Shown here piece by piece: positions 9,080 to 58,506 of a stretch of 64,000 nucleotides of DNA (positions within the stretch are counted from its first letter, which is position 1; each line of letters opens with the position of its first letter). The notes under the pieces were generated by a model. That model searched no databases and was not told the origin of the DNA. It was given only the letters and a program-made list of their open reading frames with translations. The stretch spans positions 297,491 to 361,490 of the IMG/VR virus record IMGVR_UViG_3300034073_005389; one strand, 5' to 3'. The position numbers and the translations under genes were made by a program.

Positions 9080-9101
9080 ATGTTACCTAATAACAATTTA
9101 G

Positions 9102-9183
9102 TGGGAAGTGATGAATTTGAACCACCGTAGTCTATGACAAAGCGTTTACAGCGCTCCCCCGTTAGCCACTTGGGTAACTTCCC
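9102..9183 (-). tRNA. tRNA-Tyr(GTA)
   Basis: GAGCG-CT-GTA-AA-CGCTT, long variable arm. Confidence 0.9.
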
Positions 9184-10730: not shown

Positions 10731-10743
10731 AACTTTCCTTTAG

Positions 10744-10815
10744 AGCAGGCGACAAGACTTGAACTTGCAACATTTCGGATGGAAACCGAAGGCTCTGCCA
10801 TTGAGCTACGCCTGC
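10744..10815 (-). tRNA. tRNA-Gly(TCC)
   Basis: TTCGG-TT-TCC-AT-CCGAA; discriminator T. Confidence 0.9.
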
Positions 10816-26320: not shown

Positions 26321-26914
26321 TCAATCATCAGAATTATTCTGATCTTCTTCTGCTTCCATTTCTCGAAGATACTCTACTTCTGATTCAGCTAAGAAATGCT
26401 CTAGCTCATTAACGTATTCTTCCAATTCATCAGCATTAGAATAATCACGATATTCATCGTGAAAACTACCATCTGTAGTATGAGCTACGCCCATAAAACG
26501 ATTACCTGACTCTAAATACTCCAGACGAATTCTAAGACCACGATCCTTATATTTATCATAAATATCTTCAAAAGCCGCTACTGGTGGTCCCCAAGCACTA
26601 TCAAAGTTTGATCTAAGTTCAAACTTATCGTGATCTTCTTCGAAAATTTCCAAATCATCAACTGGACCAACATCCCATTTAGTTCCCCAATTCTCTACAC
26701 ACCAATCATACCAAGATTTATATCCATATTTCTCTTGGTTTTGCTGCATCTTACTAGGCATATCGCCAGCTTCATTAGCATAAACTGCTTCAGTTTCAAG
26801 CAATTCTTGCGGGCATGGAACTAACTTTTGCAAAGACAATTTAGTCTCTGCAATCTCCTGAATTACATCTTTAGGTCCAGACAAAAATAAACTGTTTTGA
26901 CACCAATTAGGCAT
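26321..26914 (-). CDS. DUF1281/YubB-like ferredoxin-fold protein
   Basis: MPNWC, WCVENWGTKW, FDSAWGPP. Confidence 0.75.
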   Translation of the reverse strand: MPNWCQNSLFLSGPKDVIQEIAETKLSLQKLVPCPQELLETEAVYANEAGDMPSKMQQNQEKYGYKSWYDWCVENWGTKWDVGPVDDLEIFEEDHDKFELRSNFDSAWGPPVAAFEDIYDKYKDRGLRIRLEYLESGNRFMGVAHTTDGSFHDEYRDYSNADELEEYVNELEHFLAESEVEYLREMEAEEDQNNSDD

Positions 26915-27227: not shown

Positions 27228-27719
27228 TTAGCCTCCACGATAACCGCGATAATCTTCTCGAAGATCACGAAGAATTTTGCCGCCCTTTATCTCAAAAATT
27301 CCTTTGAATTGAGCACCTCGCTCATAATATTTGAGCAAAAATCTAACCGCAGGGTACTTGTCACTCATCTTATGAATTACTGGAATCGGAGGACTCCATG
27401 CAGAATCAAAATAATATGTGGCACGACTACGAGAACCAGACAATCTAGAACTAACTAGCTTAGATCGATAAATTCCCCACTTAGTCCCCCAATTATCAAT
27501 ACACCATTGATAACCGCCAGAATTAAATCCATCTTTAATATAATTGCCCTGCTCACGAGCAAGAGCTGCCATTTCATCCATTTTCTTAAAATTTTCAGGG
27601 TATGGAATGTACTTATTAGCACTTAAAACTTCCAAACCTTCTTGCGAAAATTCCATGAAATCTATCACAAAGATTTCTTTACCATAAACAAACAAATCTT
27701 GTGAACAATGATTAGGCAT
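27228..27719 (-). CDS. DUF1281/YubB-like protein (paralog of 26321-26914)
   Basis: MPNHC, WCIDNWGTKW, FDSAWSPP. Confidence 0.75.
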   Translation of the reverse strand: MPNHCSQDLFVYGKEIFVIDFMEFSQEGLEVLSANKYIPYPENFKKMDEMAALAREQGNYIKDGFNSGGYQWCIDNWGTKWGIYRSKLVSSRLSGSRSRATYYFDSAWSPPIPVIHKMSDKYPAVRFLLKYYERGAQFKGIFEIKGGKILRDLREDYRGYRGG

Positions 27720-28415: not shown

Positions 28416-28631
28416 TTATCCTTTACGACTAACAGTTCCATAACCGTCACCGAAACCATTACCGTAACGGTCACTATAATTATAACCGTAACCATAACCG
28501 TCACCGTCACCGCCACTGTAACCGTAACCGTTACCGTAACCTTCACCGCCAAAGCCACTGTAACCGTAACCGTAACCATTACCGTAACCGTAACCGTCAC
28601 GGCTTCCAACTAGCATAAAATATTCTTCCAT
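28416..28631 (-). CDS. Gly/Tyr-repeat protein, copy 5 (71 aa)
   Basis: MEEYFMLVG-(GX)n-TVSRKG. Confidence 0.75.
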   Translation of the reverse strand: MEEYFMLVGSRDGYGYGNGYGYGYSGFGGEGYGNGYGYSGGDGDGYGYGYNYSDRYGNGFGDGYGTVSRKG

Positions 28632-28635
28632 ATAT

Positions 28636-28965
28636 TTACCTCTTACGACTAACAGTTCCGTAACCGCAACCGTCACTGTCACCATAACCGTAACCGTAAC
28701 CGTAACCGTAACCGTCACCACGACCATTACCGTAACCATTACAATTACCGTAACCATTACCGTAACCGGAACCGTCACCGGAACCGTCACCGGAACCATT
28801 ACCATTACCATTACCATTACCGTAACCATTACCGGAACCATTACCGGAACCATTACCGGAACCATTACCGGAACCATCACTGTAACTGTAACTGTAACCG
28901 TAACCGTAACCATTACCGTAACCGTAATGGTCACGGCTTCCAACTAACATAAAATATTCTTCCAT
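28636..28965 (-). CDS. Gly/Tyr-repeat protein, copy 4 (109 aa)
   Basis: MEEYFMLVG-(GX)n-TVSRKR. Confidence 0.75.
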   Translation of the reverse strand: MEEYFMLVGSRDHYGYGNGYGYGYSYSYSDGSGNGSGNGSGNGSGNGYGNGNGNGNGSGDGSGDGSGYGNGYGNCNGYGNGRGDGYGYGYGYGYGDSDGCGYGTVSRKR

Positions 28966-28969
28966 ATAT

Positions 28970-29242
28970 TTACCTCTTACTAACAGTTTCGTAACCGTAA
29001 CCGTCACCGTAACCGGAACCATCATCATAACCGTAACCATAACCGGAACCATAATCGTTACCGTAACCATTACCGTAACCATAACCGTTACCGTAACCAT
29101 TACTGTAGCCGTAACCGTAACCGTCACCATAACCACGACCATTACCGTAACCGTAACCATTACCGTCACCGCAACCGTCACCATTAAAGGAAACGTCACC
29201 GGAACCATAACCATTACCGACTAACATAAAATATTCTTCCAT
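28970..29242 (-). CDS. Gly/Tyr-repeat protein, copy 3 (90 aa)
   Basis: MEEYFMLVG-(GX)n-ETVSKR. Confidence 0.75.
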   Translation of the reverse strand: MEEYFMLVGNGYGSGDVSFNGDGCGDGNGYGYGNGRGYGDGYGYGYSNGYGNGYGYGNGYGNDYGSGYGYGYDDGSGYGDGYGYETVSKR

Positions 29243-29246
29243 ATGT

Positions 29247-29492
29247 TTACCTCTTACGACTAACAGTTCCGTAACCGGAACCGCCACCGTAACCGTTACC
29301 GTAACCGTAACCGCCACCGTAACCGTTACCGTAACCGGAACCGCCACCGTAACCGTAACCGTAACCGTAACCGCCACCGTAACCGTAACCGTCACCGTAA
29401 CCGTTACCGTAACCGTCACTGTAACCGTAACCGTAACCGTAACCGTAACCGTCACCGGAACCATTACCGACTAACATAAAATATTCTTCCAT
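29247..29492 (-). CDS. Gly/Tyr-repeat protein, copy 2 (81 aa)
   Basis: MEEYFMLVG-(GX)n-TVSRKR. Confidence 0.75.
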   Translation of the reverse strand: MEEYFMLVGNGSGDGYGYGYGYGYSDGYGNGYGDGYGYGGGYGYGYGYGGGSGYGNGYGGGYGYGNGYGGGSGYGTVSRKR

Positions 29493-29496
29493 ATGT

Positions 29497-29676
29497 TTAC
29501 CTCTTACGACCAACAGTTTCGTAACCGTAACCGTCACCGTAACCGGAACCATCATCATAACCGGAACCATAACCGGAACCATAATCGTTACCATAACCGT
29601 TACCGTAACCATAACCATTACTGTAGCCGTAACCGTAACCGTCACCATTACCAACTAACATAAAATATTCTTCCAT
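29497..29676 (-). CDS. Gly/Tyr-repeat protein, copy 1 (59 aa)
   Basis: MEEYFMLVG-(GX)n-ETVGRKR; GAAGGA RBS. Confidence 0.75.
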   Translation of the reverse strand: MEEYFMLVGNGDGYGYGYSNGYGYGNGYGNDYGSGYGSGYDDGSGYGDGYGYETVGRKR

Positions 29677-29703
29677 ATATAAGTCCTTCAATGGAAGGTA
29701 AGA

Positions 29704-29737
29704 TAATCCCCATCATCATTATGATGATGGGGATTAT
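29704..29737. other. Strong hairpin between the DUF6948-like gene and the Gly/Tyr array
   Basis: TAATCCCCATCATCAT-T-ATGATGATGGGGATTA; no U tract on the minus strand. Confidence 0.6.
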
Positions 29738-29742
29738 TAGTT

Positions 29743-30069
29743 TCAAAGCCCCCAGTCAGAAGAAACTGGAACCCTGAAAATTTCAGATTCCTTAGGAAAA
29801 TCTACAACATGATCCATCTTCCTAAGAGTAACGCTCTTACTCTTAGGATCTTTAAGCACACCGTCGAATCCACAAGATTCCCACTTAAAAACCCAAACTG
29901 CATTACTCAGTCGAACTCGACCATTTTCTTCTGTTACATCACCTGCAAAAACCCAACCACGATCTACCACAACAACACAACGATTACCAGAAGGAACTAC
30001 AGTTCCAACAGAATCCTTACGAACATAATCAACGCCATTAATCGAAATAGTTTCAACAATAGTATTCAT
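29743..30069 (-). CDS. Sm-like/DUF6948-like phage protein
   Basis: INGVDYV, VVVDRGWVFAG, L.NA..V.KW pattern; family name from memory. Confidence 0.55.
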   Translation of the reverse strand: MNTIVETISINGVDYVRKDSVGTVVPSGNRCVVVVDRGWVFAGDVTEENGRVRLSNAVWVFKWESCGFDGVLKDPKSKSVTLRKMDHVVDFPKESEIFRVPVSSDWGL

Positions 30070-30123: not shown

Positions 30124-30555
30124 TTAACCCTGAACCTCTACCACATAATAAAAATTAAAATTAAAACAATTAAGCAATCGAGCCCAATCACTATCAGATG
30201 GCTCAACCACAGATTGACCTCCTTGGTTATCATCAAAATAAGTAACGTTATCCCACCACTCTGATGCCGTCTTTCCAAATAGCTTCATAAAGATTCCATC
30301 TTTACCATCTAGCTCATCACTAGAACCACGATGATCCAAAACTTCATCTAAACTATAACCATAATCTTTAATACTTCCATCTTCAAGAATATTTCTAAAT
30401 TGCTCAATATTCTTTTGAAGCATCACTTTTTCAGCAGCCTCTTTACTAGTAAAGACTCTACTAGGATTACCTCCCTCACTAGGAAGATAAACCTCATCGT
30501 TATAATCAAAACCAGCTTCCATCAACACAAAATAACTCATTGTTACCTCAATCAA
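30124..30555 (-). CDS. Hypothetical protein
   Basis: FDYNDEVY motif. Confidence 0.6.
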   Translation of the reverse strand: MIEVTMSYFVLMEAGFDYNDEVYLPSEGGNPSRVFTSKEAAEKVMLQKNIEQFRNILEDGSIKDYGYSLDEVLDHRGSSDELDGKDGIFMKLFGKTASEWWDNVTYFDDNQGGQSVVEPSDSDWARLLNCFNFNFYYVVEVQG

Positions 30556-30904
30556 CTTTAATTGTTAGGTTTTTATTTTGCTTACGCTGTGAACCTAACA
30601 TCCAATCTTGGATGTTAATATTTTGCATCCATTGATCTAGACTAGGAATAAATCCTAAATCTTCAATCACATGATCTTCAGCAATATCCCGAACAGAAAC
30701 TAACTTACCATCAGAATTAGTAATTGTAATTCCGTAAGTTTTCTCTACAATAAAAATTCCAAATGCAGAATGGAAAATAGCTCGGTGCTGCATCGAAGCA
30801 CATGCTGCTTTACTACTATCCATGAAATTATGGATGTCAATATAATCTTCCCACTTACCGCCATGCTTTTTAGCAGAATTCTTAGCGTGAATCAAAGGCT
30901 TCAT
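30548..30904 (-). CDS. Conserved His-motif phage protein (DUF6915-like)
   Basis: HAKNSAKKHGG, IHNFMDSSK, HRAIFHS, EDHVIEDLG. Confidence 0.7.
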   Translation of the reverse strand: MKPLIHAKNSAKKHGGKWEDYIDIHNFMDSSKAACASMQHRAIFHSAFGIFIVEKTYGITITNSDGKLVSVRDIAEDHVIEDLGFIPSLDQWMQNINIQDWMLGSQRKQNKNLTIKVD

Positions 30905-45985: not shown

Positions 45986-46166
45986 TTATTTAGGGTAAGT
46001 AACAACCTACCCTTCACTTCTAATGAATTAGGTTAACCGATGGGAAACCCTGTTCATAACAATAGGCAGTTTAGACACATGCCCAGGTGTATCTTACTAT
46101 AATCACCATGCTACCAAATGTCAACTCTCAAGTATTTTATAAATATATAGGCTGTCAATGGCAAGA

Positions 46167-46400
46167 TTAGATTTCCACCATTGCCAAACGCACATTGGTA
46201 AACGTATACGGAACACCATCCGGCGTCTTATCAGGAAGATAGGAAAGCAGCTTCCTAGCCGCTTCATCCCTATTAGGAGAAGTACGAATACACTCAAGCA
46301 TCAGTCGATACAAGGGTTCATCATTACCCAGCCAAAGACACACATTCCAAGCGTTGTAGTTCTTATGCCCGTTATACTTCTTAGACATTTGTGCCTCCAC
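46167..46400 (-). CDS. Conserved hypothetical phage protein
   Basis: YNG..NY..WNV.LW..NDE.LY, TPDG. Confidence 0.75.
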   Translation of the reverse strand: MEAQMSKKYNGHKNYNAWNVCLWLGNDEPLYRLMLECIRTSPNRDEAARKLLSYLPDKTPDGVPYTFTNVRLAMVEI

Positions 46401-46413
46401 TAGACTTGAGTAG

Positions 46414-46734
46414 TTAGACCCACATTCCTTCGTGGAAAGGAACTACATTTCCATCCTTTTTCCGAAAAAACCATTTGAACTTTCGCTGAAAAAGATCTCC
46501 ACGAGAACCAATAGCCTGATTGATTCTCCTCTTGGTGGTTACACCCCTATAGTTGTTTGTAAGCAACTGAACATCCCCGTTCTTATTCCAAGTCACCACT
46601 GGAGTATTATGGTAAAACAAACCAATGGCATCAGCGGTAATACGAGCAACCCTCGTTGCCTTCTTACCACGAACATTCTTGCTATTCTTGCCATTCAAGA
46701 ACTGTTCCGCCGAAACATAGCTACAAGGAATCAT
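46414..46734 (-). CDS. Hypothetical basic protein
   Basis: TTKRRIN motif. Confidence 0.65.
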   Translation of the reverse strand: MIPCSYVSAEQFLNGKNSKNVRGKKATRVARITADAIGLFYHNTPVVTWNKNGDVQLLTNNYRGVTTKRRINQAIGSRGDLFQRKFKWFFRKKDGNVVPFHEGMWV

Positions 46735-47087
46735 AAATACCTCTTCAACTATTAGAGTAATAGGTTACAATAACTGCTTGATATTCACCAGCAGTATTTA
46801 CCACAACTCCAAGTACCGCTCCCATTCCTCCAGGAAAAGAACTTCTCTCATAAGCAATAACATGCTTACGACCATGCATATAAGCATCTTCAGCAGAAGA
46901 AAATAGTTCTGGCAAAACCACAGGTTCTCTAGGAAACGGATTATGAAAACTATAAAAGGGAAGCCCATTAGAATAATGACCCTTTGGATTTAGGTCTAAA
47001 ACCTGAATGTTCATTGTAAACCTCTTATAAGAAAACTTCTTGATTATAAGATTAGGTATTTCAGAATAAGCCCCTGGCTACTTCCAC

Positions 47088-47150
47088 TACAGAAGCGCGG
47101 AATCGAACCGCACGCAGTTTCTAGTTTCGTGCACAAAACTATACTTCTGC
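47088..47150 (-). ncRNA. Reduced tRNA-like RNA (acceptor + T arm + one hairpin)
   Basis: GCAGAAG/CTTCTGT, TGCGG-TTCGATT-CCGCG, TAGTTTTG-TGCA-CGAAACTA. Confidence 0.5.
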
Positions 47151-49067
47151 TTATTCAGATAAGTTAGCTACTCTTACCTTGAAATACCTAATCTTATAAA
47201 CAAAAATATTAGGCAGTTTATACACATGCCCAGGTGTCAACATGATTGACTCCTTCATTCCAGAAACTATTTTACCACTTATACAAACACATAACAAAAA
47301 CAATACCACCCGAAACAAACCAAGAGCCAACCATAACCAAAAACCCAGTTTGTGCCGACATACTAACCTCTATAGTTATGTGATTTGTTGAATACAAAAA
47401 GGCAGTTTATACACATACCCAGGTGTATAAACTACGCTCAGTCTTCGATCCCGCCTTTGCGGAAGGCTTGGAAGACTTTACCAATGAAATAAGCGGGGAT
47501 GCAGATGAGCTTGGGGGGATTATGCGCCTCGGGTCCGGCGAGAACCAAGATTTCGTATTCGTCAGTCTCCGTGTTGTATCCAACAAGAACGTCATCGTTC
47601 AGAACGAGTTTGTTTTTCATGTGCTATCCTTTCAGAGTGAACTTTGAACCGCCATGTTTAGAGCAACAGAACAATCCATTCAGGAGTAACTTTGCACTAG
47701 ACACTTTGCCGCATTACGAATGATCCTCATCACAGCCTCCTTGTAGAATCACACACATTTGTGTATTATAATAAACCAACAAGCCGAGAGACTAAATAAA
47801 AATATGTCTCTCTTTCTTGCTGCAACAAGCAAACGATTATAGCTTATCTACTTGCAGGTAAATAAACCTTATCGTTTCTTTATAATCACTTGTTGGCTTA
47901 TTGTAATACACAAGGCAGTTTATACACTTGCCTAGGTGTTTGGGTTATTTGGTAAAAATAAGTGGGGCATTTGGTAAAAATAGGATTTGCACCTATTTCT
48001 CCCTATCCAGGGCGAGTTAGCTATACTCCTTTACCACTATCCCCGGTCCTATTAGATTGATAGGTAATCTCACTAATAGGTATTAGGTAGTTTAGACACT
48101 TGCCTAGGTGTGTATGGCTATTCTCTGAAAGGCTCCCAGGTTACTATCCTCGGTCCTATTAGATTGACTAAGAGGTAATAAAAATGGCAACCATCCAAAC
48201 ATCTTTATCCACGGTTGCCATCACCGGATAAAGAAATAGCAACCATCTCAACATACTTTACCCACGGTTGCCATCACCGAGTAAAGCTGGAACGGTTTCA
48301 GGTAAATCCGCCAACCAAAACTATTAGGCAGTTTATCCACTTGCCCAGGTGTATTCCTCACGGCAAGAAATACCTTCCATCCACCGCATCAACCTTATCC
48401 AGCATATCCAGAATCTTGTTCTTCTCCTCGCCTTCCGACAATCCTCGAACCACCAACATCAGATTGTCCCAGGCATCCTGATCAATGCCGTATTCATCAT
48501 CCAAAAGAGACTCAATGAAGTTGAACATTGTGCTTACCTCCAATCCAACCCAACCTTGTCCCCTACCTACAATCTCCCAAGTTTACCGATGGGAACCCCC
48601 ACTTATTGCCAACAAAGCCGAAACCTTGTTGGCAATCCTGTCAATCCTCTACCCGCTCCAAATAACTCTCCTCCTCATTAGAGGTTTTTTTGTAACCCGT
48701 AGCCACCACAATCTCTCCCGAACTGTCCTCCGAGAATACCGCATCAGGACAAACTTGCAACACCAGTTGCACCATTTCCGCAAAAGTGATCTTCATCACC
48801 ACCCAACCTTGTCAGGAGATACCACCAAACAAAAATACGGATTCCCAGGTTTCATCAATCGCAACTTGTTTCCCAGCTTTCCCATAAAACAATACACGCC
48901 AGCATAACCAGAAACACTTGCATACACCAAATCACCAATCCGCAAGTTCATTATGCCTCCTGTTTTATCTCCAACCAACCGCTCCCCCCACCTCTAATCA
49001 CCCAAGTTGACCGATGGGAGCCGTTTGCACTTACCAGGAAGCCCATTACAGGCTTCCCAGTAAATAA

Positions 49068-49394
49068 TCACTTTTGAAGCGCCTTCTTTTCCATATTCTC
49101 CGTGGCAACTTCCACCAGTTGCCGAACATACTTATACATCATCACTCTGGCTTTATTCAAATGATTTCCCGTCAACTTCTTACCACTCATTAGCCATTTG
49201 GCATAATAAGTGCCAAGCCTGGCATCAGGTCCATTGAAGCCTTTGCCATTCGTGTGCAATGTGGTATTGCTGGTTTGCTCATCCATGGTTTGACGAGCAA
49301 AAATAGCCAATACCGCCCTCTCCACCGCATAATCATTGCAAAGCAACAAATAACGAATGTAATCCGGACTATTCTTTTCCATCTTTTCCTCCAA
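49068..49394 (-). CDS. Conserved hypothetical phage protein
   Basis: RQT.DEQ...T.H.NG.GF...DA, KY..QL. Confidence 0.75.
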   Translation of the reverse strand: MEEKMEKNSPDYIRYLLLCNDYAVERAVLAIFARQTMDEQTSNTTLHTNGKGFNGPDARLGTYYAKWLMSGKKLTGNHLNKARVMMYKYVRQLVEVATENMEKKALQK

Positions 49395-49413
49395 AAAAAG
49401 ATTTTCAAGAACT

Positions 49414-49459
49414 TGGACGGAGGGAAAGGAATCGAACCTTTCCTACAACCATTCTCCGT
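49414..49459 (-). ncRNA. tRNA-minihelix-like element ending in CCA
   Basis: CGGAG-AATGGTTGTA-GGAAAGG-TTCGATT-CCTTTCC-CTCCG-T-CCA, intergenic. Confidence 0.5.
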
Positions 49460-49468
49460 ATTCTCTAA

Positions 49469-49801
49469 CTACTTGCGCGAAATACCACCATTCTGCCCAC
49501 GACTCGCCACAAACTTATTGCTCCCAGCAAGATAATCAGCAATCCGCTTGCTCAATCGACCATAATCCTCATACCGATTGCTAATCTTAGCAAACACCTG
49601 CCCAATCAGCAATGGCTTCACCACCTTTGCGTTATTGTTCTCATCAAAAATACTATTCAAAGCATTCTCAATCAGAATATCCTCCGAAAGATTGACATTC
49701 TCCCATTCCACCAAATCCCCCATAAACTTATTCAGCGTAGCCTCATGATCAATCGCACCCGCGTCATTACGAATAACATAGGAAACAAAATCAATCTTCA
49801 T
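49469..49801 (-). CDS. Winged-helix-like protein (AT-rich copy)
   Basis: SYVIRNDAGAIDHEATL.KFM.DL...IADYL...RGQNGG. Confidence 0.65.
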   Translation of the reverse strand: MKIDFVSYVIRNDAGAIDHEATLNKFMGDLVEWENVNLSEDILIENALNSIFDENNNAKVVKPLLIGQVFAKISNRYEDYGRLSKRIADYLAGSNKFVASRGQNGGISRK

Positions 49802-49869
49802 AATCTTTTTTTCCTTTCAGCAACCAACCATTCCCCCCACCTCTAATCACTCAGGTTGACCGATGGGCT

Positions 49870-50300
49870 AACCCATACATACTTATCTGCCTATTTACCC
49901 ATTCACACATACATACATTTTTTCTGCCCGCTTACGCACACCCGTATACCCACCAACCATAAACATACTCTCCCATTCATACACACCCCTACTTACACTC
50001 CCCCAATAACCTATAAACTATAATAAATACATTCCACCCAAACTAACTACCCAATATCTCAATACCTACACCCCCACACACATCTATATGCAAAATTTAT
50101 TCTACCTATACCTTATACAATACCACTATTCCTTATTTCCATAACTTACATTTCTCCCGCCCCCATTCTTTATTTCCCTAAATCTGCACCCCATTTCTTT
50201 CTTATTTCTACTTATTTATAAAATAGATTATGTAGTTTAGTGTATATGTGTATTGATGTGTCTATGTTTGTGTGCAGTATAATAAATAAAAAAAGTTTGT
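49870..50300. other. Non-coding strand-skewed boundary segment
   Basis: About 350 nt nearly G-free (C/A/T) on +, flipping to C-poor G/T-rich at about 50225; no ORFs. Confidence 0.7.
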
Positions 50301-50451
50301 TTTTGGCTAGGGCAAAAACCATTGTGTGCAGTTGTTTGAATCTATGCCTAAATGTGTTTTGCGCCCTAGCCAAAAAGCATTTTTTTTAGGGCTAGGGCTT
50401 ATGCCACACCCAATTGCCAACCGAATGCATTTATCCAAAAACACAAACACA

Positions 50452-50557
50452 AAAAAAAAAGCCAATGGCGGGATTTCCGCCATTGGCTTTCACACACGCA
50501 AAAAAAGACAAAAAAAAAGACAAAAAAAAAGCCCCAGCGCATTGGCGCTGGGGCTTT
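50452..50557 (-). terminator. Two tandem intrinsic terminators closing the GC-rich cassette region
   Basis: GCCAATGGCGG..CCGCCATTGGC and GCCCCAGCGC..GCGCTGGGGC, each preceded on + by long A runs. Confidence 0.8.
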
Positions 50558-50577
50558 GGGAGACGGTCAGTCAGGTT

Positions 50578-50925
50578 TCACCGAGCGATGCGCTCGACTC
50601 CGCCATTCTGACCACGCTGGGCGTGGAATCGCGTCTTGTCTCCCAAGTAATCCGCGATCTTCTTAGAGAATTCCCCGAACTGAGTGAACGAAACACCCTT
50701 TCCGAGAAGGTACTGGAACGCTTCGCCCACCACCAGGGGCTTGGGCATGCGTTTGTTATCGTGACGGTCAAAGACCGAGTTGACGGCTTCGCGGATGAGT
50801 TCGAACTCATCCGCCGAAGCGGACTCGAAAGCGATGAGGTCTTGCATGAACTTGTGGAGCGTTTGCTCGTGATCGATGGAACCATCATCCGAGCGAACCA
50901 CGTAGCTAGCGAGATTGATCTCCAT
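50578..50925 (-). CDS. Winged-helix-like protein (GC-rich copy)
   Basis: SYVVRSDDGSIDHEQTL.KFM.DL...IADYL...RGQNGG; GGAGG RBS. Confidence 0.7.
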   Translation of the reverse strand: MEINLASYVVRSDDGSIDHEQTLHKFMQDLIAFESASADEFELIREAVNSVFDRHDNKRMPKPLVVGEAFQYLLGKGVSFTQFGEFSKKIADYLGDKTRFHAQRGQNGGVERIAR

Positions 50926-51222
50926 GACTGTATCCTCCGAAGGGCGTTGCGGCGTGATTGCCTGCCCTCAATATTGGTTCTGCAGGTTGACCGATGGGTG
51001 CAACCGGGACAAAAAAACCTTTACTCAGGGGCATGTTGACCGATGGGTACAATCCATCTAAAAAACCAAAACCCCCGTTGAATAGCAGAGGTTGACCGAT
51101 GGGCGCTTTGACGCGCAGGTACATTGTAGATTAGAGGTTGACCGATGGGAACCCGATTGCACTTGGCAAAAAAAAATCCCAGGTGCCTAAGCACCTGGGA
51201 TAAGATAAGACTCACTTTAGTA

Positions 51223-51396
51223 CTAGCTGGTTCGCACCTGGTAACCCACCGCCTTCTCCAGGCTCTTGTCGGTTTGGCTCAGGTTCAGCTTGAGCGCTTC
51301 CTTACGAGCCGTAAGCAAACACTCGTACACCTTCACCACCGACTCAGACAAGGAGTTGCTTTCCAGGTCCAGCTGCAGACGAACGATCTTGTACAT
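51223..51396 (-). CDS. Cassette hypothetical protein
   Basis: AGGAGG RBS, start MYKIV. Confidence 0.6.
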   Translation of the reverse strand: MYKIVRLQLDLESNSLSESVVKVYECLLTARKEALKLNLSQTDKSLEKAVGYQVRTS

Positions 51397-51518
51397 AGAG
51401 CCTCCTATCAGGAATGACCCTGACACAGTAGTATTGCCTGGTTGACCGATGGGTGCGATCCATTAAAACTTGCTCAGGTACAGATGTACCTGAGCAAGTT
51501 AGGCTAAGCTACTACCTG

Positions 51519-52079
51519 TCAGCCGTGAGAGAAGCTGACCTTGGTGGGTCGGGTTGCCATCAGCTTGAAGTCGCTGGTGAACGTACGCTCCTTCATCACA
51601 GGTCCAGAACGCTTACCCATCACCCTGGCGATTGCCTCGTCACGGTCCACTTCCATCGTGATGTGATTAGTGGAGCCGTCTTTGTTGGTGATCTTGGAGT
51701 CAATCACCCCTCGACAACCTGGCGGTCCAGCATCTAGCTTGCGATCCACCCACCTGGACGCTTCCCCACTCATGTAGAAACCCATCTCCTCCAACACTCC
51801 ACCCTTCGCATCGTAGATGCAGGCGTTGATGGGCTTCTGCACCTTCTCACGCTGGCGTGTAGCCTTGGCTTCCTGCTTCTTCTCAGGAACCCTGAGAAGG
51901 TCTTGCAAGACCGCCTCTTGCACCAGCTTGAGCGCTGGCGTCGGATACAGCTCTCCCTTCTCCAGGCGAGCCAGAATCGAGACAGCCTCGGGAATCCCCG
52001 AAAGGAACTCCCTTTGAGCCTGCAAGAAAGCGGCAGCGGAAACCTTACCAGCGGACTGACGCAGGAACTTCTTGTGCAT
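51519..52079 (-). CDS. Cassette hypothetical protein
   Basis: GGAGG RBS, start MHKKF. Confidence 0.7.
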   Translation of the reverse strand: MHKKFLRQSAGKVSAAAFLQAQREFLSGIPEAVSILARLEKGELYPTPALKLVQEAVLQDLLRVPEKKQEAKATRQREKVQKPINACIYDAKGGVLEEMGFYMSGEASRWVDRKLDAGPPGCRGVIDSKITNKDGSTNHITMEVDRDEAIARVMGKRSGPVMKERTFTSDFKLMATRPTKVSFSHG

Positions 52080-52189
52080 AGGAACCTCCAAACAAAGCCG
52101 TGATTGGCTCACCTATGTTTGTGCAAGTTGACCGATGGGTTCAAGCCACTGAAAACGCTCTTGAGACCATGTGGTCTCAAGAGCCTAGA

Positions 52190-52399
52190 CTAGAAGCTCA
52201 AAGGCGATCCATCCTCGTGTTCAGACTCCTCCGGCAACATGTCAATGAATGGGGCTGCCGTCTCCCAATCATCCTCACAGGCACCTCCCCTGAGGTTGAG
52301 CGTGTGAATACGCTCAAAATCAGGAATATAGCTGTCCATCTCATCTTCCAACATGGGGACGGATCGAGGAACGTATTGCTTTCCCATAACTACCTCCAT
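52190..52399 (-). CDS. Cassette acidic hypothetical protein
   Basis: Between motif 52432 and 3' hairpin. Confidence 0.55.
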   Translation of the reverse strand: MEVVMGKQYVPRSVPMLEDEMDSYIPDFERIHTLNLRGGACEDDWETAAPFIDMLPEESEHEDGSPLSF

Positions 52400-52528
52400 G
52401 AACCATGATTGGTTCACAATAGGTTTAGCAAGTTGACCGATGGGCTACCTGGATTGCACTCAACAAAAAAAAACGCCCTAGTACTCGTGTGTGAGTACTA
52501 GAGCGTTTAGGTGTGTGAGACTGTTTAG

Positions 52529-53110
52529 TTACACGCCGAGAGCAGCAAGCCGCTCATCGATGTTATTGATGCGTTCTTGTTCCCACGCTTCCGCACCAGG
52601 ATCATCTTGGTTGTGAGCGTGTAGCAGTGCTTCCACTGCCACTCGACGCTGAGCAATCAAGTTGTCAATCTCTCGCTGCCTGGGATTGGGCATACCTTTG
52701 ACGTAGCCCTGCAAGGTAGCTTGAGCGGTTGGTGCTGGAGACTTGCCGTATCGCTCTTGTTGGATCAAGTACCTGGCTCGTTGCCTGGCACGATCCAACT
52801 GCAAGCTGTACAGCTCACCAGTGTATGCGCCCGTGAACTTCTCAATGGCTCTGATGATTTCTTTCTTTGTCTCCGCTTCGGACTTTTCCTTGTTTGCCAG
52901 ATTGCACTCATGGATGAACGTTTTAGCGTCCTCCAAGGTTGCAACCTTGGTCGGCATGGGCGGAGGCGTTTGAGCAGGCTTGACAGGCTTGCTTACCACC
53001 TTTCGCTCCTCGGGAATGGTCCGGATTTGGATTGTCTGACGCTTCTCTTGCAACTTGGCAAGAGACGCAGCATACAACGCAATCATTTCGCGGAGATCGA
53101 CTTTGTTCAT
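52529..53110 (-). CDS. Cassette hypothetical protein
   Basis: GGAG RBS, start MNKVD. Confidence 0.7.
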   Translation of the reverse strand: MNKVDLREMIALYAASLAKLQEKRQTIQIRTIPEERKVVSKPVKPAQTPPPMPTKVATLEDAKTFIHECNLANKEKSEAETKKEIIRAIEKFTGAYTGELYSLQLDRARQRARYLIQQERYGKSPAPTAQATLQGYVKGMPNPRQREIDNLIAQRRVAVEALLHAHNQDDPGAEAWEQERINNIDERLAALGV

Positions 53111-53231
53111 GTTTACTCCAATCCACTGACAAGTGCCAGTAGACACCTATGGTTGTGCTGGTTGACCGATGGGTGTGAGCCGCTGAAACAAAATGCTCAG
53201 GTCTATATAGACCTGAGCACCTGTCAACTCG

Positions 53232-53480
53232 TCACCTCTCGTCAGTGAGAACCATCACGAACTCCTTGTCAAGCAAGATCTTGAGCGCATCATCCTGTTC
53301 GGATGGATGCAGCTGTACTTCCAAGGGGAAGAATCGGCTCCAATCATAGGCTCGAACCCGGTATTCTTCCGGCTCACCTGCACAGTCCCAAGTAGGACCT
53401 TTGGCTGGAACATAGTCCAGCTCCAGGTCTACGGTAATGGTTTTGTGGTTGCGTACGATCTGCATCTGAATGTCTTTCAT
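53232..53480 (-). CDS. Cassette hypothetical protein
   Basis: AGGAGG RBS. Confidence 0.65.
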   Translation of the reverse strand: MKDIQMQIVRNHKTITVDLELDYVPAKGPTWDCAGEPEEYRVRAYDWSRFFPLEVQLHPSEQDDALKILLDKEFVMVLTDER

Positions 53481-53574
53481 AAAACCTCCTGGGTCAATGG
53501 TGGTGTAGTAAGTTGACCGATGGGTGCATACAACTGAAAACGCTCATGGAACCATATGGATCCATGAGCATAAA

Positions 53575-53820
53575 CTAGATGATGTTGAGCCTGCTCCAAA
53601 ACCTTTGGCTTTCTTTCCCTACCTCACACAGAGGCAAAGGAGCGACTTCATTTTGAGCAAGCATGCGCCTGACTTTACGCCCTTCCTGGTCCTCCTTGAA
53701 ACCAGGAAGGCAAATAAAGTCTCTGGAAACGGCTTCAGAGAATGCGTCCTCCAACGCAATCTCGAACTGTTTCTCAGACTCGAACTTATAGCCACTGATA
53801 GTGTAAATGCACTGTGCCAT
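53575..53820 (-). CDS. Cassette hypothetical protein
   Basis: GGAGG RBS, start MAQCI. Confidence 0.6.
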   Translation of the reverse strand: MAQCIYTISGYKFESEKQFEIALEDAFSEAVSRDFICLPGFKEDQEGRKVRRMLAQNEVAPLPLCEVGKESQRFWSRLNII

Positions 53821-53939
53821 AAATAGCACCTCCGTAACCTACTTACTGCTTGTTGACCGATGGGTTACCTGGATTGAACTTAACAAAAAAACCCAGGCTT
53901 ACATGGACTCATTAGAATCCACATAAACCTGGGCTCTCA

Positions 53940-54167
53940 CTACCTCACCAACACGAAGGTGTTGGGTTGACCCAGCCAGCTGTTGAGCTGGGTCGCCATC
54001 TGCCTTGCATCTTGGTATGTGTACTCTTGTACACGAGTTATGCCGTTGCGAGTGTCTCGCAACTTCCAACCTTTCTCCTCGAACAATGCCAGGAAACAAT
54101 CCTGGCAAATCGGCTTGCAGTTGAACTTGCATGTGCTTGCGCTTTTATCACACATCTGGCAGTTCAT
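53940..54167 (-). CDS. Cassette Zn-finger-like protein
   Basis: CQMC...CQDC. Confidence 0.6.
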   Translation of the reverse strand: MNCQMCDKSASTCKFNCKPICQDCFLALFEEKGWKLRDTRNGITRVQEYTYQDARQMATQLNSWLGQPNTFVLVR

Positions 54168-54280
54168 AATGCCTTTCCATCTACTCTGTTTGGTGAGTAG
54201 ACACCTATACCTATCTATGTTGACCGATGGGTGCACACAACTGAAACGTTGTGCAGGAGTTGCCTCCTGCACAACCTTTC

Positions 54281-54739
54281 TCAGTAGTCGTCGCGACCCG
54301 ACCACCGATCCTGTTCCATGTACTGCATGTACCTCTCCTCCTCGTTCCAGTGCTCGTAGGGTCGCATCATACGAGCGTTGTAGTCTCTGAGTACCGACTC
54401 CAGCGCCTCCCGCTTGGCGTGGAGCCTGTTGATGTAGGCGTCTCGCTGCGCCTCCATCTCTTCGTTCACCTGCTCTCGTAGGTGATCGCGCTCCTCCTTG
54501 GTCAAGTCGCGACCAAGAGCAGACTCACGACTACAGAACTCCTCATACGCACGCTCTTGGAAGAGGTCATCCTCCATCTCACGTGCGTGGTCGTCCCAGT
54601 GGTAACGCTCGATCTGAGCATTGGTATCATTCCACTGAGAGGCGAGACCCTTGATGATCTCCTCCTTTGCCTGAGCGATCAGGCGCTCGTGGTCCGTAGC
54701 GTTTTCGGGGCACTCGATGTTGATCACGTATCCACGCAT
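54281..54739 (-). CDS. Cassette acidic protein, paralog of 45425-45865
   Basis: RPYEHWNEEERYMQYME. Confidence 0.7.
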   Translation of the reverse strand: MRGYVINIECPENATDHERLIAQAKEEIIKGLASQWNDTNAQIERYHWDDHAREMEDDLFQERAYEEFCSRESALGRDLTKEERDHLREQVNEEMEAQRDAYINRLHAKREALESVLRDYNARMMRPYEHWNEEERYMQYMEQDRWSGRDDY

Positions 54740-54867
54740 ATCAGCCTCCAGACAAGCCTTGATTGGCTCACTTATGTTTTTGCATGTTGACCGATGGGTA
54801 CAGCCCACTGAAAAAAAACCGTGTCAGGAAATTCCTGACACGGCTAGGTATGTACGCTAGTTGGCGA

Positions 54868-55074
54868 TCACTTGACCTTGATCACCAGACCGTTTTGCAC
54901 GGTCACCTCTGCGTACCAGGTATGGGGCTGCGGGTAGTGCGGTCCACCTACCGCAGTAGTCCCATTCTCTGGCGGGTTGCCGAGACCAGGTGCGTAAATA
55001 TGCACCGGTTTCCCGGCAGCCACATCATCCTTGAGTTGCTTCTTGGTCTTGTAGTTCTTGGTGGTGTAGAACAC
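54868..55074 (-). CDS. Cassette conserved small phage protein
   Basis: KTKKQLK...GPHYPQPHTWYA. Confidence 0.75.
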   Translation of the reverse strand: MFYTTKNYKTKKQLKDDVAAGKPVHIYAPGLGNPPENGTTAVGGPHYPQPHTWYAEVTVQNGLVIKVK

Positions 55075-55202
55075 TGAACCCTCCTAGACAAAGCCGTGAT
55101 TGGCTCAATGGTAGTTGTGCAGGTTGACCGATGGGTACGGACCACTGAAACATGCTTGGAAGCATTCGCTTCCAAGCACGTTTTGTTGAGAGTGTTGTTA
55201 GA

Positions 55203-56827: not shown

Positions 56828-57039
56828 GTCTACTTATCCTTTCTTGCGTGAACAATAGTCCAACGCAAAGAAAAAGAACCCCATAGAACATGAAGTCAAA
56901 TAACTCCATAACTATGTTTGTACATGTTGACCGATGGGTGCGAACCATTGAAACAAGAACCCAGGATTGCTGTTGCAATCCTGGGTTCTTATCTGCTCAC
57001 CCACCGGAATCCGTTAGGACTCAACAGTGGGTGAGTGTG

Positions 57040-57900: not shown

Positions 57901-58032
57901 GTGAGCCTCCTAGAAAGCCGTGTGTGAAGTTGTACGGCTCACATACAGTTGTGCAAGTTGACCGATGGGTACAAGCCATGTAGAAAATCGGTGAGTCAGA
58001 ATCTCGAAAGACTCAATGACTCACCGAGTGTG

Positions 58033-58506
58033 TCAACCGTAGAGCGTTCGGAGGGTCGCGCAAACGCGCGTCGCCTCCGATTGTTGGAACCGCTCCACTT
58101 TCTGGAGCAGTTCGATTGACTCTTCCCGGTCCATGCCGGGAAGCTGACGGAGTGCCAGCAACAGCAGTTTGCTGCTGGCGGTGGGTGCGCCGTCGAAGCG
58201 CACCACCTCACCGTTGAGGGTGAGGGAGAAGGGCTCATCGCCCTCCTCGCCCTCGCCCTCGCCCTCATTGCCGAGTGCCTCACCGAGTGACCATGCGGTC
58301 ACTCGGTGGGAGGAGGTGCCTGAGTGCCCGTCAAGGCGCACCGACACCCCCTCCTCGTGGGTGAGGGTAAGAACTGCGGGGAGGAGTAACGTACTCCTCC
58401 CGATGTGGTGCCTGAACGAGCCGAGGACAATCGCCCCCAGCTCGTTCAGCACCACCTGGCGGGGTTCAAACCCCGCCATGGCTGCGAAACCAGTTGCAAT
58501 AATCAT
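58033..58506 (-). CDS. Cassette hypothetical protein
   Basis: AGGAGG RBS, start MIIAT. Confidence 0.6.
   Translation of the reverse strand: MIIATGFAAMAGFEPRQVVLNELGAIVLGSFRHHIGRSTLLLPAVLTLTHEEGVSVRLDGHSGTSSHRVTAWSLGEALGNEGEGEGEEGDEPFSLTLNGEVVRFDGAPTASSKLLLLALRQLPGMDREESIELLQKVERFQQSEATRVCATLRTLYG

What the first reader, a model, noticed from the sequence alone, without database searches (positions are those of the whole stretch)
28416..30069. Five translationally coupled Gly-X repeat mini-genes with constant ends and variable cores
Seen: five tandem genes (59, 81, 90, 109, 71 aa), each MEEYFMLVG-(G-Y/N/D/S/G)n-TV(S/G)RK(R/G), separated by exactly 4 nt. The next gene's RBS (AAGAGG) is built into the previous gene's last codons and stop, so the frame shifts at each junction. 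Cores differ in length and repeat flavour, and copies 1 and 3 share a 3' block. They follow a DUF6948-like gene and a strong hairpin. Inference: a diversifying array with a constant leader for a partner (the upstream Sm-like protein?) and a low-complexity core that could form amyloid, condensates or polyglycine-II bundles, or act as a decoy or modification substrate.
Basis: partly seen in the sequence, partly recalled or inferred. Interest (0 to 1): 0.75.

Follow-up and report, generated by a model that had tools for sequence, protein, structure and literature searches.

The report
Amplified Gly-Tyr mini-genes beside Sm-like gene
A giant freshwater phage carries five tandem copies of a tiny glycine-tyrosine repeat gene that, in every related phage examined, sits directly behind one conserved Sm-like protein gene, which defines a widespread two-gene phage module that has not been described and whose function is unknown.

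Summary
Five minus-strand genes (59, 81, 90, 109 and 71 aa) share the start MEEYFMLVG, a (Gly-X)n core and a TV(S/G)-basic end. They are joined by TAA plus 4 nt plus ATG, and AAGAGG lies in the last codons of each preceding gene.

The main new result is that this is an amplified form of a conserved pair. A ~105-aa protein of predicted Sm/LSm-like fold (window 29743-30069, near but below Pfam DUF6948) is followed directly by a Gly-Tyr gene in all 48 informative loci examined. These include the cultured Rheinheimera phage Barba18A and Eggerthella phage PMBT5. Most loci have one copy, close relatives have at least two, and this window has five.

The Gly frame is under selection:
- The end motifs persist across GC contents.
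- Natural isolates differ by in-frame 6-nt indels.
- Codon usage is reversed relative to neighbouring genes (GGY and NAC codons).
- The Barba homologues are transcribed with the replication genes.

The Gly-Tyr proteins are predicted to be disordered. Their 2-residue period argues against polyglycine-II bundles, and no modifying enzyme is linked to them. My best reading is a co-expressed Sm-like protein and a Tyr-rich low-complexity partner that act on nucleic acid early in infection. That function is inferred, not shown.

The parts
29743..30069 (-). Partner gene. A 108-aa, strongly conserved protein with a predicted Sm/LSm-like beta-barrel, structurally nearest to DUF6948 but below its Pfam threshold.
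   Evidence: The family has more than 340 proteins at 90% clustering and 318 clusters at 50% identity. There are 14 invariant residues. The AF2 model has pLDDT 89. Foldseek and VIA-align hits are nearly all Sm/LSm/Hfq, best Z 8.1. BFVD and Atlas neighbours carry DUF6948. Pfam gives no hit for this protein and at best 14 bits in relatives. The gene is single-copy in the genome.
29703..29737 (-). Hairpin with a 16-bp stem between the partner gene and the first Gly-Tyr gene. No U-run follows it.
   Evidence: The 81-nt stretch folds at -30.5 kcal/mol, z -4.6. The hairpin is identical in L034. L039 has a 15-bp hairpin of different sequence at the same place. It is absent where the two genes overlap, for example L038.
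29685..29698 (-). Small stem (CCTTC/GAAGG) that contains the SD-like GAAGGA of copy A.
   Evidence: Found; sequence read. Any regulatory role is inference only.
29497..29676 (-). Gly-Tyr gene A, 59 aa. It shares exact 52-nt and 37-nt blocks with copy C.
29247..29492 (-). Gly-Tyr gene B, 81 aa, with a GGG-containing core. AAGAGG of gene A lies 7 nt before its ATG.
   Evidence: With a family alignment, AF2 gives pLDDT 31 throughout.
28970..29242 (-). Gly-Tyr gene C, 90 aa.
28636..28965 (-). Gly-Tyr gene D, 109 aa, with a core rich in G-S and G-N. Its first 75 nt match copy E.
28416..28631 (-). Gly-Tyr gene E, 71 aa, the last copy. Its tail is RKG and the SD-like motif has decayed to AAAGGA.
   Evidence: In related strains this last gene is much shorter (loose end at 28468).

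Best explanation
The five genes are a tandem amplification of the second gene of a conserved two-gene phage cassette.

Gene 1 encodes a ~105-aa Sm/LSm-like beta-barrel protein. Gene 2 encodes a small, intrinsically disordered protein with three parts:
- a short N-terminal cap (here MEEYFMLVG; in most relatives hydrophobic-[KR]-P-[VI]-G);
- a (Gly-X)n core in which X is mostly Tyr, Asn, Asp or Ser;
- a G-T-[VIPA]-S end followed by a basic cluster.

Shown:
- the pairing of the two genes and their order;
- the tight spacing that implies translational coupling;
- selection on the Gly frame;
- growth and shrinkage of the core in 6-nt units;
- copy number ranging from 1 to 5;
- early, replication-phase transcription of the homologous pair in Barba18A.

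In this window each copy has its own ATG. Copies B to E take their SD from the last two codons of the preceding gene, so the array is most likely read by coupled termination and re-initiation. This yields five separate proteins with identical ends and different core lengths.

Inferred: the Sm-like protein, probably as an oligomer, and the Gly-Tyr protein act together on nucleic acid during the early or replication phase. The cap and basic tail would anchor the protein to the partner or to nucleic acid. The Tyr-rich low-complexity core would provide multivalent self-association, as a condensate, gel or fibril. Amplification and core-length diversity would then tune the dose and material properties.
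For: Pairing:
- A strict (G-X)>=8 run starts within 200 nt after the partner's stop codon in 42 of 48 informative loci. The other six, this window among them, fail only the strict criterion; five have irregular or short Gly-Tyr genes seen by inspection.
- No such run occurs anywhere else in 377 kb of strand in the same loci.
- The run most often starts 14-17 nt after the stop, so the cap must begin at or over the stop codon.
- No other neighbouring gene is conserved.

Range:
- The pair occurs in viral contigs of GC 37-59% and in contigs of MAGs assigned to Alpha- and Betaproteobacteria, Planctomycetota, Verrucomicrobiota, Chloroflexota and Thermoleophilia.
- It occurs in three GenBank phages: Barba18A gp018/gp017, PMBT5 gp37/gp38 and MW202566.1.

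Context:
- In PMBT5 the pair lies between the SSB and DnaD/DnaI genes. In Barba it lies beside the DNA polymerase and exonuclease genes.
- Barba gp017 and gp018 both peak at the first or second time point in the replication cluster (PMC9305737 Table S2).

Coding of the Gly frame:
- The end motifs are conserved across GC contents.
- Two independent in-frame 6-nt insertions occur among Barba isolates.
- Codon bias is reversed relative to neighbours. In the window, TAC/TAT is 64/21 against 23/130 (p 2e-20) and GGY/GGR is 151/6 against 107/84 (p 1e-19). The same holds in Barba, PMBT5 and L034.

Folds: the partner has an Sm/LSm-like fold. The Gly-Tyr protein is predicted disordered.

Variation: copy number and cores vary among relatives.
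Against: - No experiment or prediction shows that the two proteins bind. The co-fold gave 'no answer'.
- No protein-level evidence (proteomics or ribosome profiling) exists for any family member.
- The Sm-like assignment rests on a predicted model with middling scores (Foldseek E about 4e-3, best Z 8.1), and Sm-like folds also serve as pure protein scaffolds.
- The distant members (Barba, PMBT5, MW202566.1) lack the cap and basic tail, so those motifs cannot be essential to the general function.
- The strong GGY-NAC codon pattern could reflect an RNA- or DNA-level role instead.
- Condensate or fibril formation rests purely on analogy with other Gly/Tyr-rich sequences.
Confidence: 0.4

Rival explanations
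1. Anti-defence or host-takeover decoy. The Gly-Tyr proteins, delivered or held by the Sm-like protein, would titrate or mimic a host factor such as a defence sensor, a tyrosine-modifying enzyme or a protease. An arms race would then drive the copy-number and core variation.
For: - The pair is transcribed in the early/replication cluster in Barba18A.
- The pair is a self-contained cassette that moves between unrelated phages with no fixed neighbours.
- It varies between closely related strains.
- It is amplified in this jumbo phage.
Against: - The partner is unusually conserved (55% mean column identity across very different hosts), and the core is compositionally uniform from Actinobacteria phages to Proteobacteria phages. 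This fits a generic physical role better than a host-specific target.
- No defence or anti-defence family matched any of the proteins in Pfam or PHROGs. PADLOC was not searched.
Confidence: 0.2
2. The functional element is the nucleic acid. The GGY-NAC hexamer array, as RNA or DNA, would be a periodic binding platform for the Sm-like protein, or an iteron-like element of the replication module. The peptide would be secondary.
For: - Codon choice is nearly fixed (GGY and NAC) even in AT-rich phages.
- X residues are mainly those of the NAY codon box.
- Sm/Hfq-type proteins bind short periodic RNA motifs (established knowledge).
- The pair sits in replication modules.
- Four of the six reading frames are open across the array.
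Against: - Peptide-level motifs outside the repeat (cap, G-T-V-S, basic tail) are conserved while the DNA differs.
- Gly codons are GGT in the window's clade but GGC elsewhere, so the hexamer itself is not conserved.
- Every copy has a start codon; copies B to E have AAGAGG and copy A has GAAGGA ahead of it.
- Indels are always whole codon pairs.
- The codon bias is the classic pattern of translational selection.
Confidence: 0.1
3. Ribosomally made secreted or modified peptides: a RiPP precursor array, or glycine-rich bacteriocin or antimicrobial-like peptides.
For: - The layout is a constant short N-terminus with a variable core, in several tandem precursor-like genes.
- Glycine-rich microcins and Gly/Tyr-rich animal antimicrobial peptides exist (established knowledge).
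Against: - The leader is only 9 aa, and 5-7 aa in most relatives.
- The only conserved neighbour is the Sm-like protein. No conserved modifying enzyme, peptidase or exporter lies nearby, and no enzyme family was found among the window's neighbours.
- There is no signal peptide or membrane segment.
- The cores are acidic, not cationic.
Confidence: 0.03
4. One polyprotein made by programmed +1 frameshifting at each junction.
For: - Each next gene lies in the +1 frame.
- An SD-like AAGAGG directly precedes each stop codon, loosely recalling the prfB frameshift site.
- The +1 (Val-Thr) frame is open through each core.
Against: - Every copy has its own ATG at canonical spacing from the SD-like motif.
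- Most relatives have a single gene and nothing to fuse to.
- AGG in the P site cannot re-pair in the +1 frame (reasoning from the sequence).
- The open +1 frame follows trivially from the GGTTAC repeat.
Confidence: 0.02
5. The five-copy array is an assembly artefact or a neutral slippage expansion with no function of its own.
For: - Short-read contigs from four runs all break inside the array.
- No record spans the array, so the order of the copies is unverified.
Against: - Exact unitigs of the distinct cores and of at least two junctions are present at about phage depth in two samples: X1 150-180 against flanks 125-143.
- The five cores differ from one another.
- Relatives independently carry at least two copies.
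- All five copies keep intact starts, ends and the Gly phase.
Confidence: 0.03

Closest known systems
Pfam DUF6948 (PF22253) and other Sm-like proteins of tailed phages
   Same: The partner is a small viral beta-barrel protein. DUF6948 proteins are its nearest named structural neighbours in BFVD (E 4e-4). The nearest ESM Atlas clusters carry DUF6948 in 16-49% of their members.
   Different: The window protein has no Pfam hit, and the best relative scores 14 bits against a cut-off of 27. I found no paper mentioning DUF6948, and no function or Gly-Tyr neighbour has been described for it.
Eukaryotic and archaeal Sm/LSm proteins and bacterial Hfq, including members with low-complexity tails (Sm B/D1/D3 and LSm4 RG-rich tails; Acinetobacter Hfq with a Gly-rich GGFGGQ tail, the last from my own knowledge)
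   Same: The predicted fold is shared: nearly all top PDB matches are Sm/LSm/Hfq. So is the theme of a small nucleic-acid-binding barrel combined with a Gly-rich disordered element.
   Different: There is no sequence-level Sm motif match. The N-terminus is a beta-hairpin rather than the Sm helix. The low-complexity part is a separate, translationally coupled gene and is Gly-Tyr/Asn/Asp rather than Arg-Gly. Ring formation and RNA binding are untested.
Gly/Tyr-rich low-complexity domains of RNA-binding proteins (FUS-type; plant GRP7/AtGRP2; PMC11239674, PMC13261584, PMC9534829)
   Same: Composition (Gly about 45%, Tyr about 24%), predicted disorder, and association with a nucleic-acid-binding fold. 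In those proteins Tyr drives phase separation.
   Different: Those domains are covalently attached and irregular. Here there is a strict 2-residue period, an acidic core, conserved end caps, a separate gene and tandem amplification, and the context is a phage.
Designed (X-Tyr)n 'prion-inspired' heptapeptides such as GYGYGYG, which form amyloid fibrils (PMC8163036, PMC10510724)
   Same: The identical alternating Gly-Tyr motif, shown to self-assemble into cross-beta fibrils.
   Different: Those are synthetic 7-mers. Nothing is known about 40-100-residue natural versions interrupted by Asp, Asn and Ser.
Compositionally similar structural proteins: sulphur globule proteins (PF17228) and keratin-associated high-Gly-Tyr proteins (PF11759)
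   Same: Sub-threshold compositional matches. These are Gly/Tyr-rich self-associating matrix proteins.
   Different: All scores are below the curated cut-offs. There is no homology, no signal peptide, and the biology is different.

Membership tests
Pfam DUF6948 (partner protein) | HMM score at or above the gathering threshold of 27 bits | tested here: not met
   The window protein has no hit even at E<=10. Only 2 of 44 family members hit, at E 0.05, and the best score is 14.1 bits. A genome search with PF22253 finds nothing.
Pfam DUF6948 (partner protein) | Same fold and neighbourhood in structure or embedding space | tested here: met
   BFVD DUF6948 proteins match at E 4e-4 to 1.5e-3, TM 0.5-0.66. 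The top Atlas clusters carry DUF6948 in 16-49% of members, score 0.95-0.96.
Sm/LSm/Hfq superfamily (partner protein) | Strongly bent five-stranded antiparallel beta-sheet barrel | tested here: met
   The AF2 model has pLDDT 89. In VIA-align, most of the top 50 chains are Sm/LSm/Hfq-type, best Z 8.1 over 64 residues. Foldseek PDB gives TM by target of 0.55-0.70. The scores are middling, so this is a fold-level statement only.
Sm/LSm/Hfq superfamily (partner protein) | Sm1/Sm2 sequence motifs and an N-terminal alpha-helix | tested here: not met
   There is no LSM, Sm_like or Hfq Pfam hit. The model begins with a beta-hairpin (strands 7-10 and 13-16), not a helix.
Sm/LSm/Hfq superfamily (partner protein) | Ring-shaped homo-oligomer that binds RNA | not testable with these tools
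Tandem double-domain fusions exist (P0183, P0184), which is compatible with oligomerisation but is not proof.
Tyr/Gly-rich low-complexity (prion-like, phase-separating) domains | Low-complexity Gly/Tyr composition with predicted disorder | tested here: met
   The cores are 45% Gly and 24% Tyr. AF2 pLDDT is 31 with a family alignment, and ESMFold2 pLDDT is 31-32.
Tyr/Gly-rich low-complexity (prion-like, phase-separating) domains | Demonstrated self-association (droplets, gels or fibrils) | not testable with these tools
   This needs purified protein.
Polyglycine-II helix bundles (snow-flea antifreeze protein, T-even gp38 adhesin type) | Three-residue periodicity (G-X-X or G-G-X) | tested here: not met
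   The period is 2. Gly occupies 149 of 187 even positions and 8 of 183 odd positions. The DNA unit is 6 nt.
RiPP precursor arrays | A leader long enough for a recognition element, plus a linked modifying enzyme, peptidase or exporter | tested here: not met
   The leader is 9 aa (5-12 in relatives). The only conserved neighbour across 31 loci is the Sm-like gene. Pfam and PHROGs annotation of ten neighbouring genes in the window found no enzyme.
Translationally coupled tandem paralogue array | Each gene has its own start codon and an SD within or next to the preceding stop codon, on the same strand, with short fixed spacers | tested here: met
   All four junctions read AAGAGG-TAA-(A[CT]AT)-ATG. 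Coupling itself is inferred from the sequence and has not been measured.

The most novel reading that the evidence does not exclude
Tailed phages of many bacterial phyla carry a dedicated two-protein system that builds a Tyr-driven condensate, gel or fibril on nucleic acid during replication. It would consist of an Sm-like ring and a trans-acting, length-tunable (Gly-Tyr)n protein. That would make it a bacterial-virus counterpart of eukaryotic LSm and prion-like RNP granule scaffolds. This jumbo phage would have amplified the scaffold gene five-fold to tune its dose and material properties.
Probability: 0.2. Interest if true: 0.85.

Novelty: new variant of a known kind. Interest (0 to 1): 0.66.

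Why it matters
The finding turns an odd local repeat into a defined and widespread phage gene pair. The pairing rule is near-absolute, and one member belongs to no Pfam family and appears in no paper I could find.

Two cultured, sequenced phage-host systems carry the pair: Rheinheimera sp. BAL341 with Barba18A, and Eggerthella lenta with PMBT5. Its function is therefore directly testable.

If the Gly-Tyr proteins self-assemble with the Sm-like partner, this would be a simple, naturally length-variable model for how alternating Gly-Tyr low-complexity sequence behaves in bacterial cells. It might also be a new kind of phage replication-phase organiser.

The reversed codon usage (GGY and NAC) is a useful signature for finding and validating such mini-genes, which gene callers often miss or call in the wrong frame (as in L037).

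Tried and rejected
- Exact degenerate-pattern scan for the MEEYFMLVG leader in viral contigs: no hit. The leader is specific to this clade.
- Pfam and PHROGs on the five mini-proteins and five relatives: only sub-threshold compositional matches (TrAA12, KRTAP, keratin head, SGP, and Gly/Tyr-rich stretches of larger PHROGs). I rejected these as evidence of homology.
- Profile search of the partner family against PDB sequences: nothing meaningful.
- Co-folding of the partner with copy A: 'no answer', score 0.01. I do not use it as evidence either way.
- AF2 of copy B with a family alignment: no fold.
- Literature searches for Gly-Tyr phage proteins, for the repeat strings and for DUF6948: no relevant phage paper. 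The Barba genome paper does not mention the gene.
- RNA runs holding this window: none served, so transcription of this particular array is unverified.
- Search for a natural partner/Gly-Tyr fusion protein among family representatives: none. I found only partner-partner tandem fusions and unrelated extensions.
- Intrinsic terminator reading of the big hairpin: rejected for the window because no U-run follows. The L039 version is followed by UUUUC.
Full report
**What is in the window.** All of the genes in question are on the minus strand. A 108-aa gene (29743-30069) is followed by a 66-nt spacer that holds a hairpin with a 16-bp stem (29703-29737; the 81-nt stretch folds at -30.5 kcal/mol, z -4.6). 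Five small genes follow:
- A, 29676..29497 (59 aa)
- B, 29492..29247 (81 aa)
- C, 29242..28970 (90 aa)
- D, 28965..28636 (109 aa)
- E, 28631..28416 (71 aa)

Every copy begins MEEYFMLVG. The 26-nt leader pattern occurs exactly five times in the window and in the whole 361-kb record, and never in shuffles. Every copy ends T-V-(S/G)-(R)-K-(R/G). The four junctions all read AAG-AGG-TAA, then ACAT or ATAT, then ATG. The SD-like hexamer of each next gene is therefore made of the last two codons of the previous one, the spacer is 4 nt, and each gene lies in the +1 frame of its predecessor. In the last copy, which has no follower, the motif has drifted to AAAGGA. Gly fills 149 of 187 even core positions and 8 of 183 odd positions. 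The X positions are Tyr 80, Asn 33, Ser 29, Asp 28 and a few others. Copies A and C share exact blocks of 52 and 37 nt, and D and E share their first 75 nt.

**Where the window comes from.** The window is the last 64 kb of a 361,490-bp IMG/VR record that is classed as a provirus and estimated to be 97% complete. About 347 kb of the record has 30-35% GC and looks like a jumbo phage. The window alone holds many small minus-strand genes, 11 tRNA genes, a UvrD-type helicase, an RNA ligase and a spore-photoproduct-lyase-like gene. The last ~14 kb has 50-59% GC. Near-identical DNA occurs in subsurface and freshwater metagenomes.

**Is the array real?** Independent short-read contigs of four runs stop inside the array, at 28586 and 29619, as expected for a repeat. 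Even so, exact unitigs of the distinct cores and of at least the E/D and D/C junctions are present at about the depth of the flanks. In X1 they are at 150-180 against flanks of 125 and 143, and X3 behaves similarly. The five cores therefore exist at roughly one copy per genome. Their order rests on the original assembly alone. Related strains at roughly 95% identity have other cores and a much shorter last gene. One of them has a 369-nt tandem duplication of the upstream gene, and the same duplication appears in contigs L033-L036.

**The main result: a conserved gene pair.** A search with copy A returned weak hits, but several had the same layout: a short cap ending in P-V-G, a (G-Y/D/N)n core, then G-T-V-S and a basic tail. 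In the first contig I opened, the gene just upstream was a clear homologue of the window's 108-aa protein.

I then collected loci by searching with that protein:
- 25 viral contigs
- 16 genome or MAG contigs
- contigs of its closest relatives
- three GenBank phages

A strict test asked for an uninterrupted (G-X)>=8 run starting within 200 nt after the partner's stop codon. It is met in 42 of 48 informative loci. The other six, the window among them, fail only the strict criterion. L012 (about 29 aa), L028, L029, L039 and L055 have short or irregular Gly-Tyr genes by inspection. In the window, the hairpin spacer and irregular copy A push the first strict run beyond 200 nt. No such run occurs anywhere else in 377 kb of strand in the same loci.

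The run most often begins 14-17 nt after the stop codon. The 5-7-residue cap must therefore start at or across the stop codon, which is the classic arrangement for translational coupling. Clustering the neighbouring genes of 31 loci (the 2-5 kb held for each) found no third gene shared by more than 6 of them. The pair is thus a self-contained cassette.

Most loci have one Gly-Tyr gene. L020, L034 and L039 have at least two. The window has five, the most seen.

**Is the Gly frame translated?** Four of the six frames are open across the GGTTAC repeat, so openness proves nothing. Five other lines of evidence support translation of the Gly frame.
1. The cap, the G-T-[VIPA]-S motif and the basic tail are conserved as peptides in loci from 37% to 59% GC.
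2. Gly positions are held while X positions drift among one-step neighbours of TAC.
3. Among near-identical cultured Barba isolates there are two independent insertions of exactly 6 nt (one Gly-Tyr unit) at different sites, plus one Asn-to-Tyr change.
4. Codon use is reversed relative to neighbouring genes. In the window, TAC/TAT is 64/21 in the array against 23/130 in twelve other genes (p 2e-20). GAC/GAT is 21/7 against 24/208 (p 5e-13), and GGY/GGR is 151/6 against 107/84 (p 1e-19). The same reversal holds in Barba18A (TAC/TAT 15/0 against 21/33), PMBT5 and L034. GGY plus NAC is the usual signature of translational selection. It could instead mark a constraint on the RNA or DNA, which I keep as a rival.
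5. In the published Barba18A infection transcriptome, gp017 (Gly-Tyr) and gp018 (partner) both peak at the first or second time point and fall in the cluster of replication and nucleotide-metabolism genes. Their values at the first time point are 10.1 and 13.0 in average log cpm (PMC9305737, Supplementary Table 2).

No RNA or protein data exist for the window's own array.

**The partner protein.** The family has more than 340 members at 90% clustering and 318 clusters at 50% identity. It is unusually conserved, with 55% mean column identity. Fourteen residues are invariant, including D36, G38, W39, D44, W63, G67, F68 and W106.
- AF2 gives a confident all-beta model (pLDDT 89).
- Foldseek against the PDB returns mostly Sm/LSm proteins. 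The top hit is 3by7, a metagenomic 'Sm/LSm-like' protein (E about 4e-3, TM by target 0.55-0.70).
- An independent VIA-align sweep of 48,161 chains gives a top-50 list that is nearly all Sm/LSm/Hfq, best Z 8.1. Each score is middling, but the consistency is convincing at the fold level.
- Among viral models, the nearest are the Barba and PMBT5 proteins, followed by DUF6948 proteins. The nearest ESM Atlas clusters carry DUF6948 in 16-49% of their members.
- By HMMER the window protein has no Pfam hit, and the best relative reaches 14 bits against a cut-off of 27.

So 'Sm-like' is supported, and 'DUF6948-like' is fair as a resemblance but not as family membership. Some family members are tandem double-domain fusions. 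I saw no fusion of the partner with a Gly-Tyr segment.

**The Gly-Tyr proteins.** They are predicted to be disordered, with AF2 pLDDT 31 using a family alignment and ESMFold2 pLDDT 31-32. They have no signal peptide or membrane segment. The core is acidic and, in the main clade, the tail is basic. The distant members (Barba, PMBT5, MW202566.1) keep the (G-X)n core but lack the P-V-G cap and the basic tail. Their nearest Atlas clusters are unnamed viral clusters. The 2-residue period fits an alternating beta-strand or silk-like arrangement, not a polyglycine-II helix, which needs a 3-residue period.

**Genomic context.** In PMBT5 the pair lies between the SSB gene and the DnaD/DnaI genes. In Barba it lies between the DNA polymerase/HNH genes and an exonuclease gene. 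In MW202566.1 it lies near RecT and a DNA methyltransferase. Another contig places it near an SNF2 helicase and an integrase. This association with replication and recombination modules, together with the early transcription, is the only functional clue beyond the folds.

**How it most likely works.**

Shown:
- a co-oriented and usually overlapping gene pair;
- selection on the Gly frame;
- expansion and contraction of the core by 6-nt slippage;
- tandem duplication and recombination between copies, seen as mosaic blocks;
- a start codon for every copy, with an embedded AAGAGG for copies B to E and GAAGGA upstream of copy A.

Inferred:
- Ribosomes finishing one copy re-initiate on the next, giving five separate proteins with the same ends and different core lengths.
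- The Sm-like protein and the Gly-Tyr proteins act together on nucleic acid early in infection. The ends would serve as anchors, and the Tyr-rich core would provide multivalent self-association.

In this clade a hairpin separates the partner gene from the array. It is identical in L034 and has a different sequence but the same position and stem length in L039. It may uncouple the expression levels of the two parts, but this is speculation.

I put about 0.4 on this overall reading. The genetic anatomy is close to certain, and the biochemical role is not.

Rivals:
- a decoy or anti-defence role (0.2)
- a nucleic-acid-level role of the GGY-NAC hexamer array (0.1)
- RiPP or bacteriocin-like peptides (0.03)
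- a frameshifted polyprotein (0.02)
- an artefact or neutral expansion (0.03)

**Comparison with what is known.** The closest analogues are nucleic-acid-binding folds joined to Gly-rich low-complexity tails. Examples are the Sm B/D1/D3 and LSm4 tails, the plant GRP7/AtGRP2 Gly/Tyr domains in which Tyr drives phase separation (PMC11239674, PMC13261584), and FUS-type domains (PMC9534829). From my own knowledge, the Gly-rich tail of Acinetobacter Hfq is another. Synthetic GYGYGYG peptides form amyloid fibrils (PMC8163036).

The present case differs in several ways. The low-complexity part is a separate, coupled gene. Its period is strictly two residues. It has conserved caps and varies in length and copy number. 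The whole unit is a mobile phage cassette.

I found no paper describing it. The Gly-Tyr protein matches no Pfam or PHROG family above threshold.

**Verdict.** The thing itself is a new variant of a known theme, and its function is still open. Two cultured phage-host systems make it testable.

Noticed in passing
window 46000-64000: GC content rises from about 35% to 50-59% over the last ~14 kb of the record, which IMG/VR classes as a provirus. This stretch also holds small ORFs and a MYG1/UPF0160-family gene (57040-57900). It could be a host flank, a second higher-GC virus, or a chimeric join. No integrase was found among the ORFs I scanned.
   Followed up: partly
window 3327-45985: There are eleven minus-strand tRNA genes: four tRNA-Leu(TAA) at roughly 7-kb intervals (23786, 31397, 38066, 45253), two tRNA-Arg(TCT), tRNA-Tyr(GTA) at 9101-9183 and tRNA-Gly(TCC) at 10743-10815. 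The phage tRNA-Tyr reads the TAC codons that dominate the array. The phage tRNA-Gly reads GGA/GGG, which the array avoids.
   Followed up: no
window 28416-29676; L040 2807-3016; L062 1788-2114; L034 3748-4044: Gly-Tyr genes use almost only GGY and C-ending NAC codons, the reverse of their neighbours' usage, even in AT-rich phages. The favoured X residues (Tyr, Asn, Asp, and rarely His) are exactly the NAY codon box, which is read by queuosine-family tRNAs.
   Followed up: partly
L033 5001-5577; L034 2967-3681; L036 431-1145; run X9 joint 30109>29741: In strains about 95% identical to the window, the Sm-like partner gene itself is tandemly duplicated (114-aa and 108-aa copies) ahead of the Gly-Tyr genes.
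   Followed up: partly
L037 3707-4036: The gene caller of a public metagenome called the Gly-Tyr gene in the wrong (Val-Thr) frame. Such mini-genes are probably often mis-annotated or missed.
   Followed up: no
window 26321-26914 and 27228-27719: Two paralogous genes with the DUF1281_C ferredoxin-like domain of Api92-like proteins lie just downstream of the array.
   Followed up: no
window 30548-30904: A DUF6915 protein (E 1e-42) lies two genes upstream of the partner. The same arrangement occurs in the closest relatives (L033-L035) but not in other phages that carry the pair.
   Followed up: partly
P0183 (209 aa), P0184 (247 aa): Some members of the partner family are single proteins with two tandem partner domains, which hints that the domain works as an oligomer.
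   Followed up: no
L041 1007-1222, L043 1007-1222 versus L040 2807-3016: Near-identical cultured Barba isolates carry two different in-frame Gly-Tyr unit insertions and one Asn-to-Tyr change in gp017. The repeat therefore changes on the timescale of a single phage population.
   Followed up: yes
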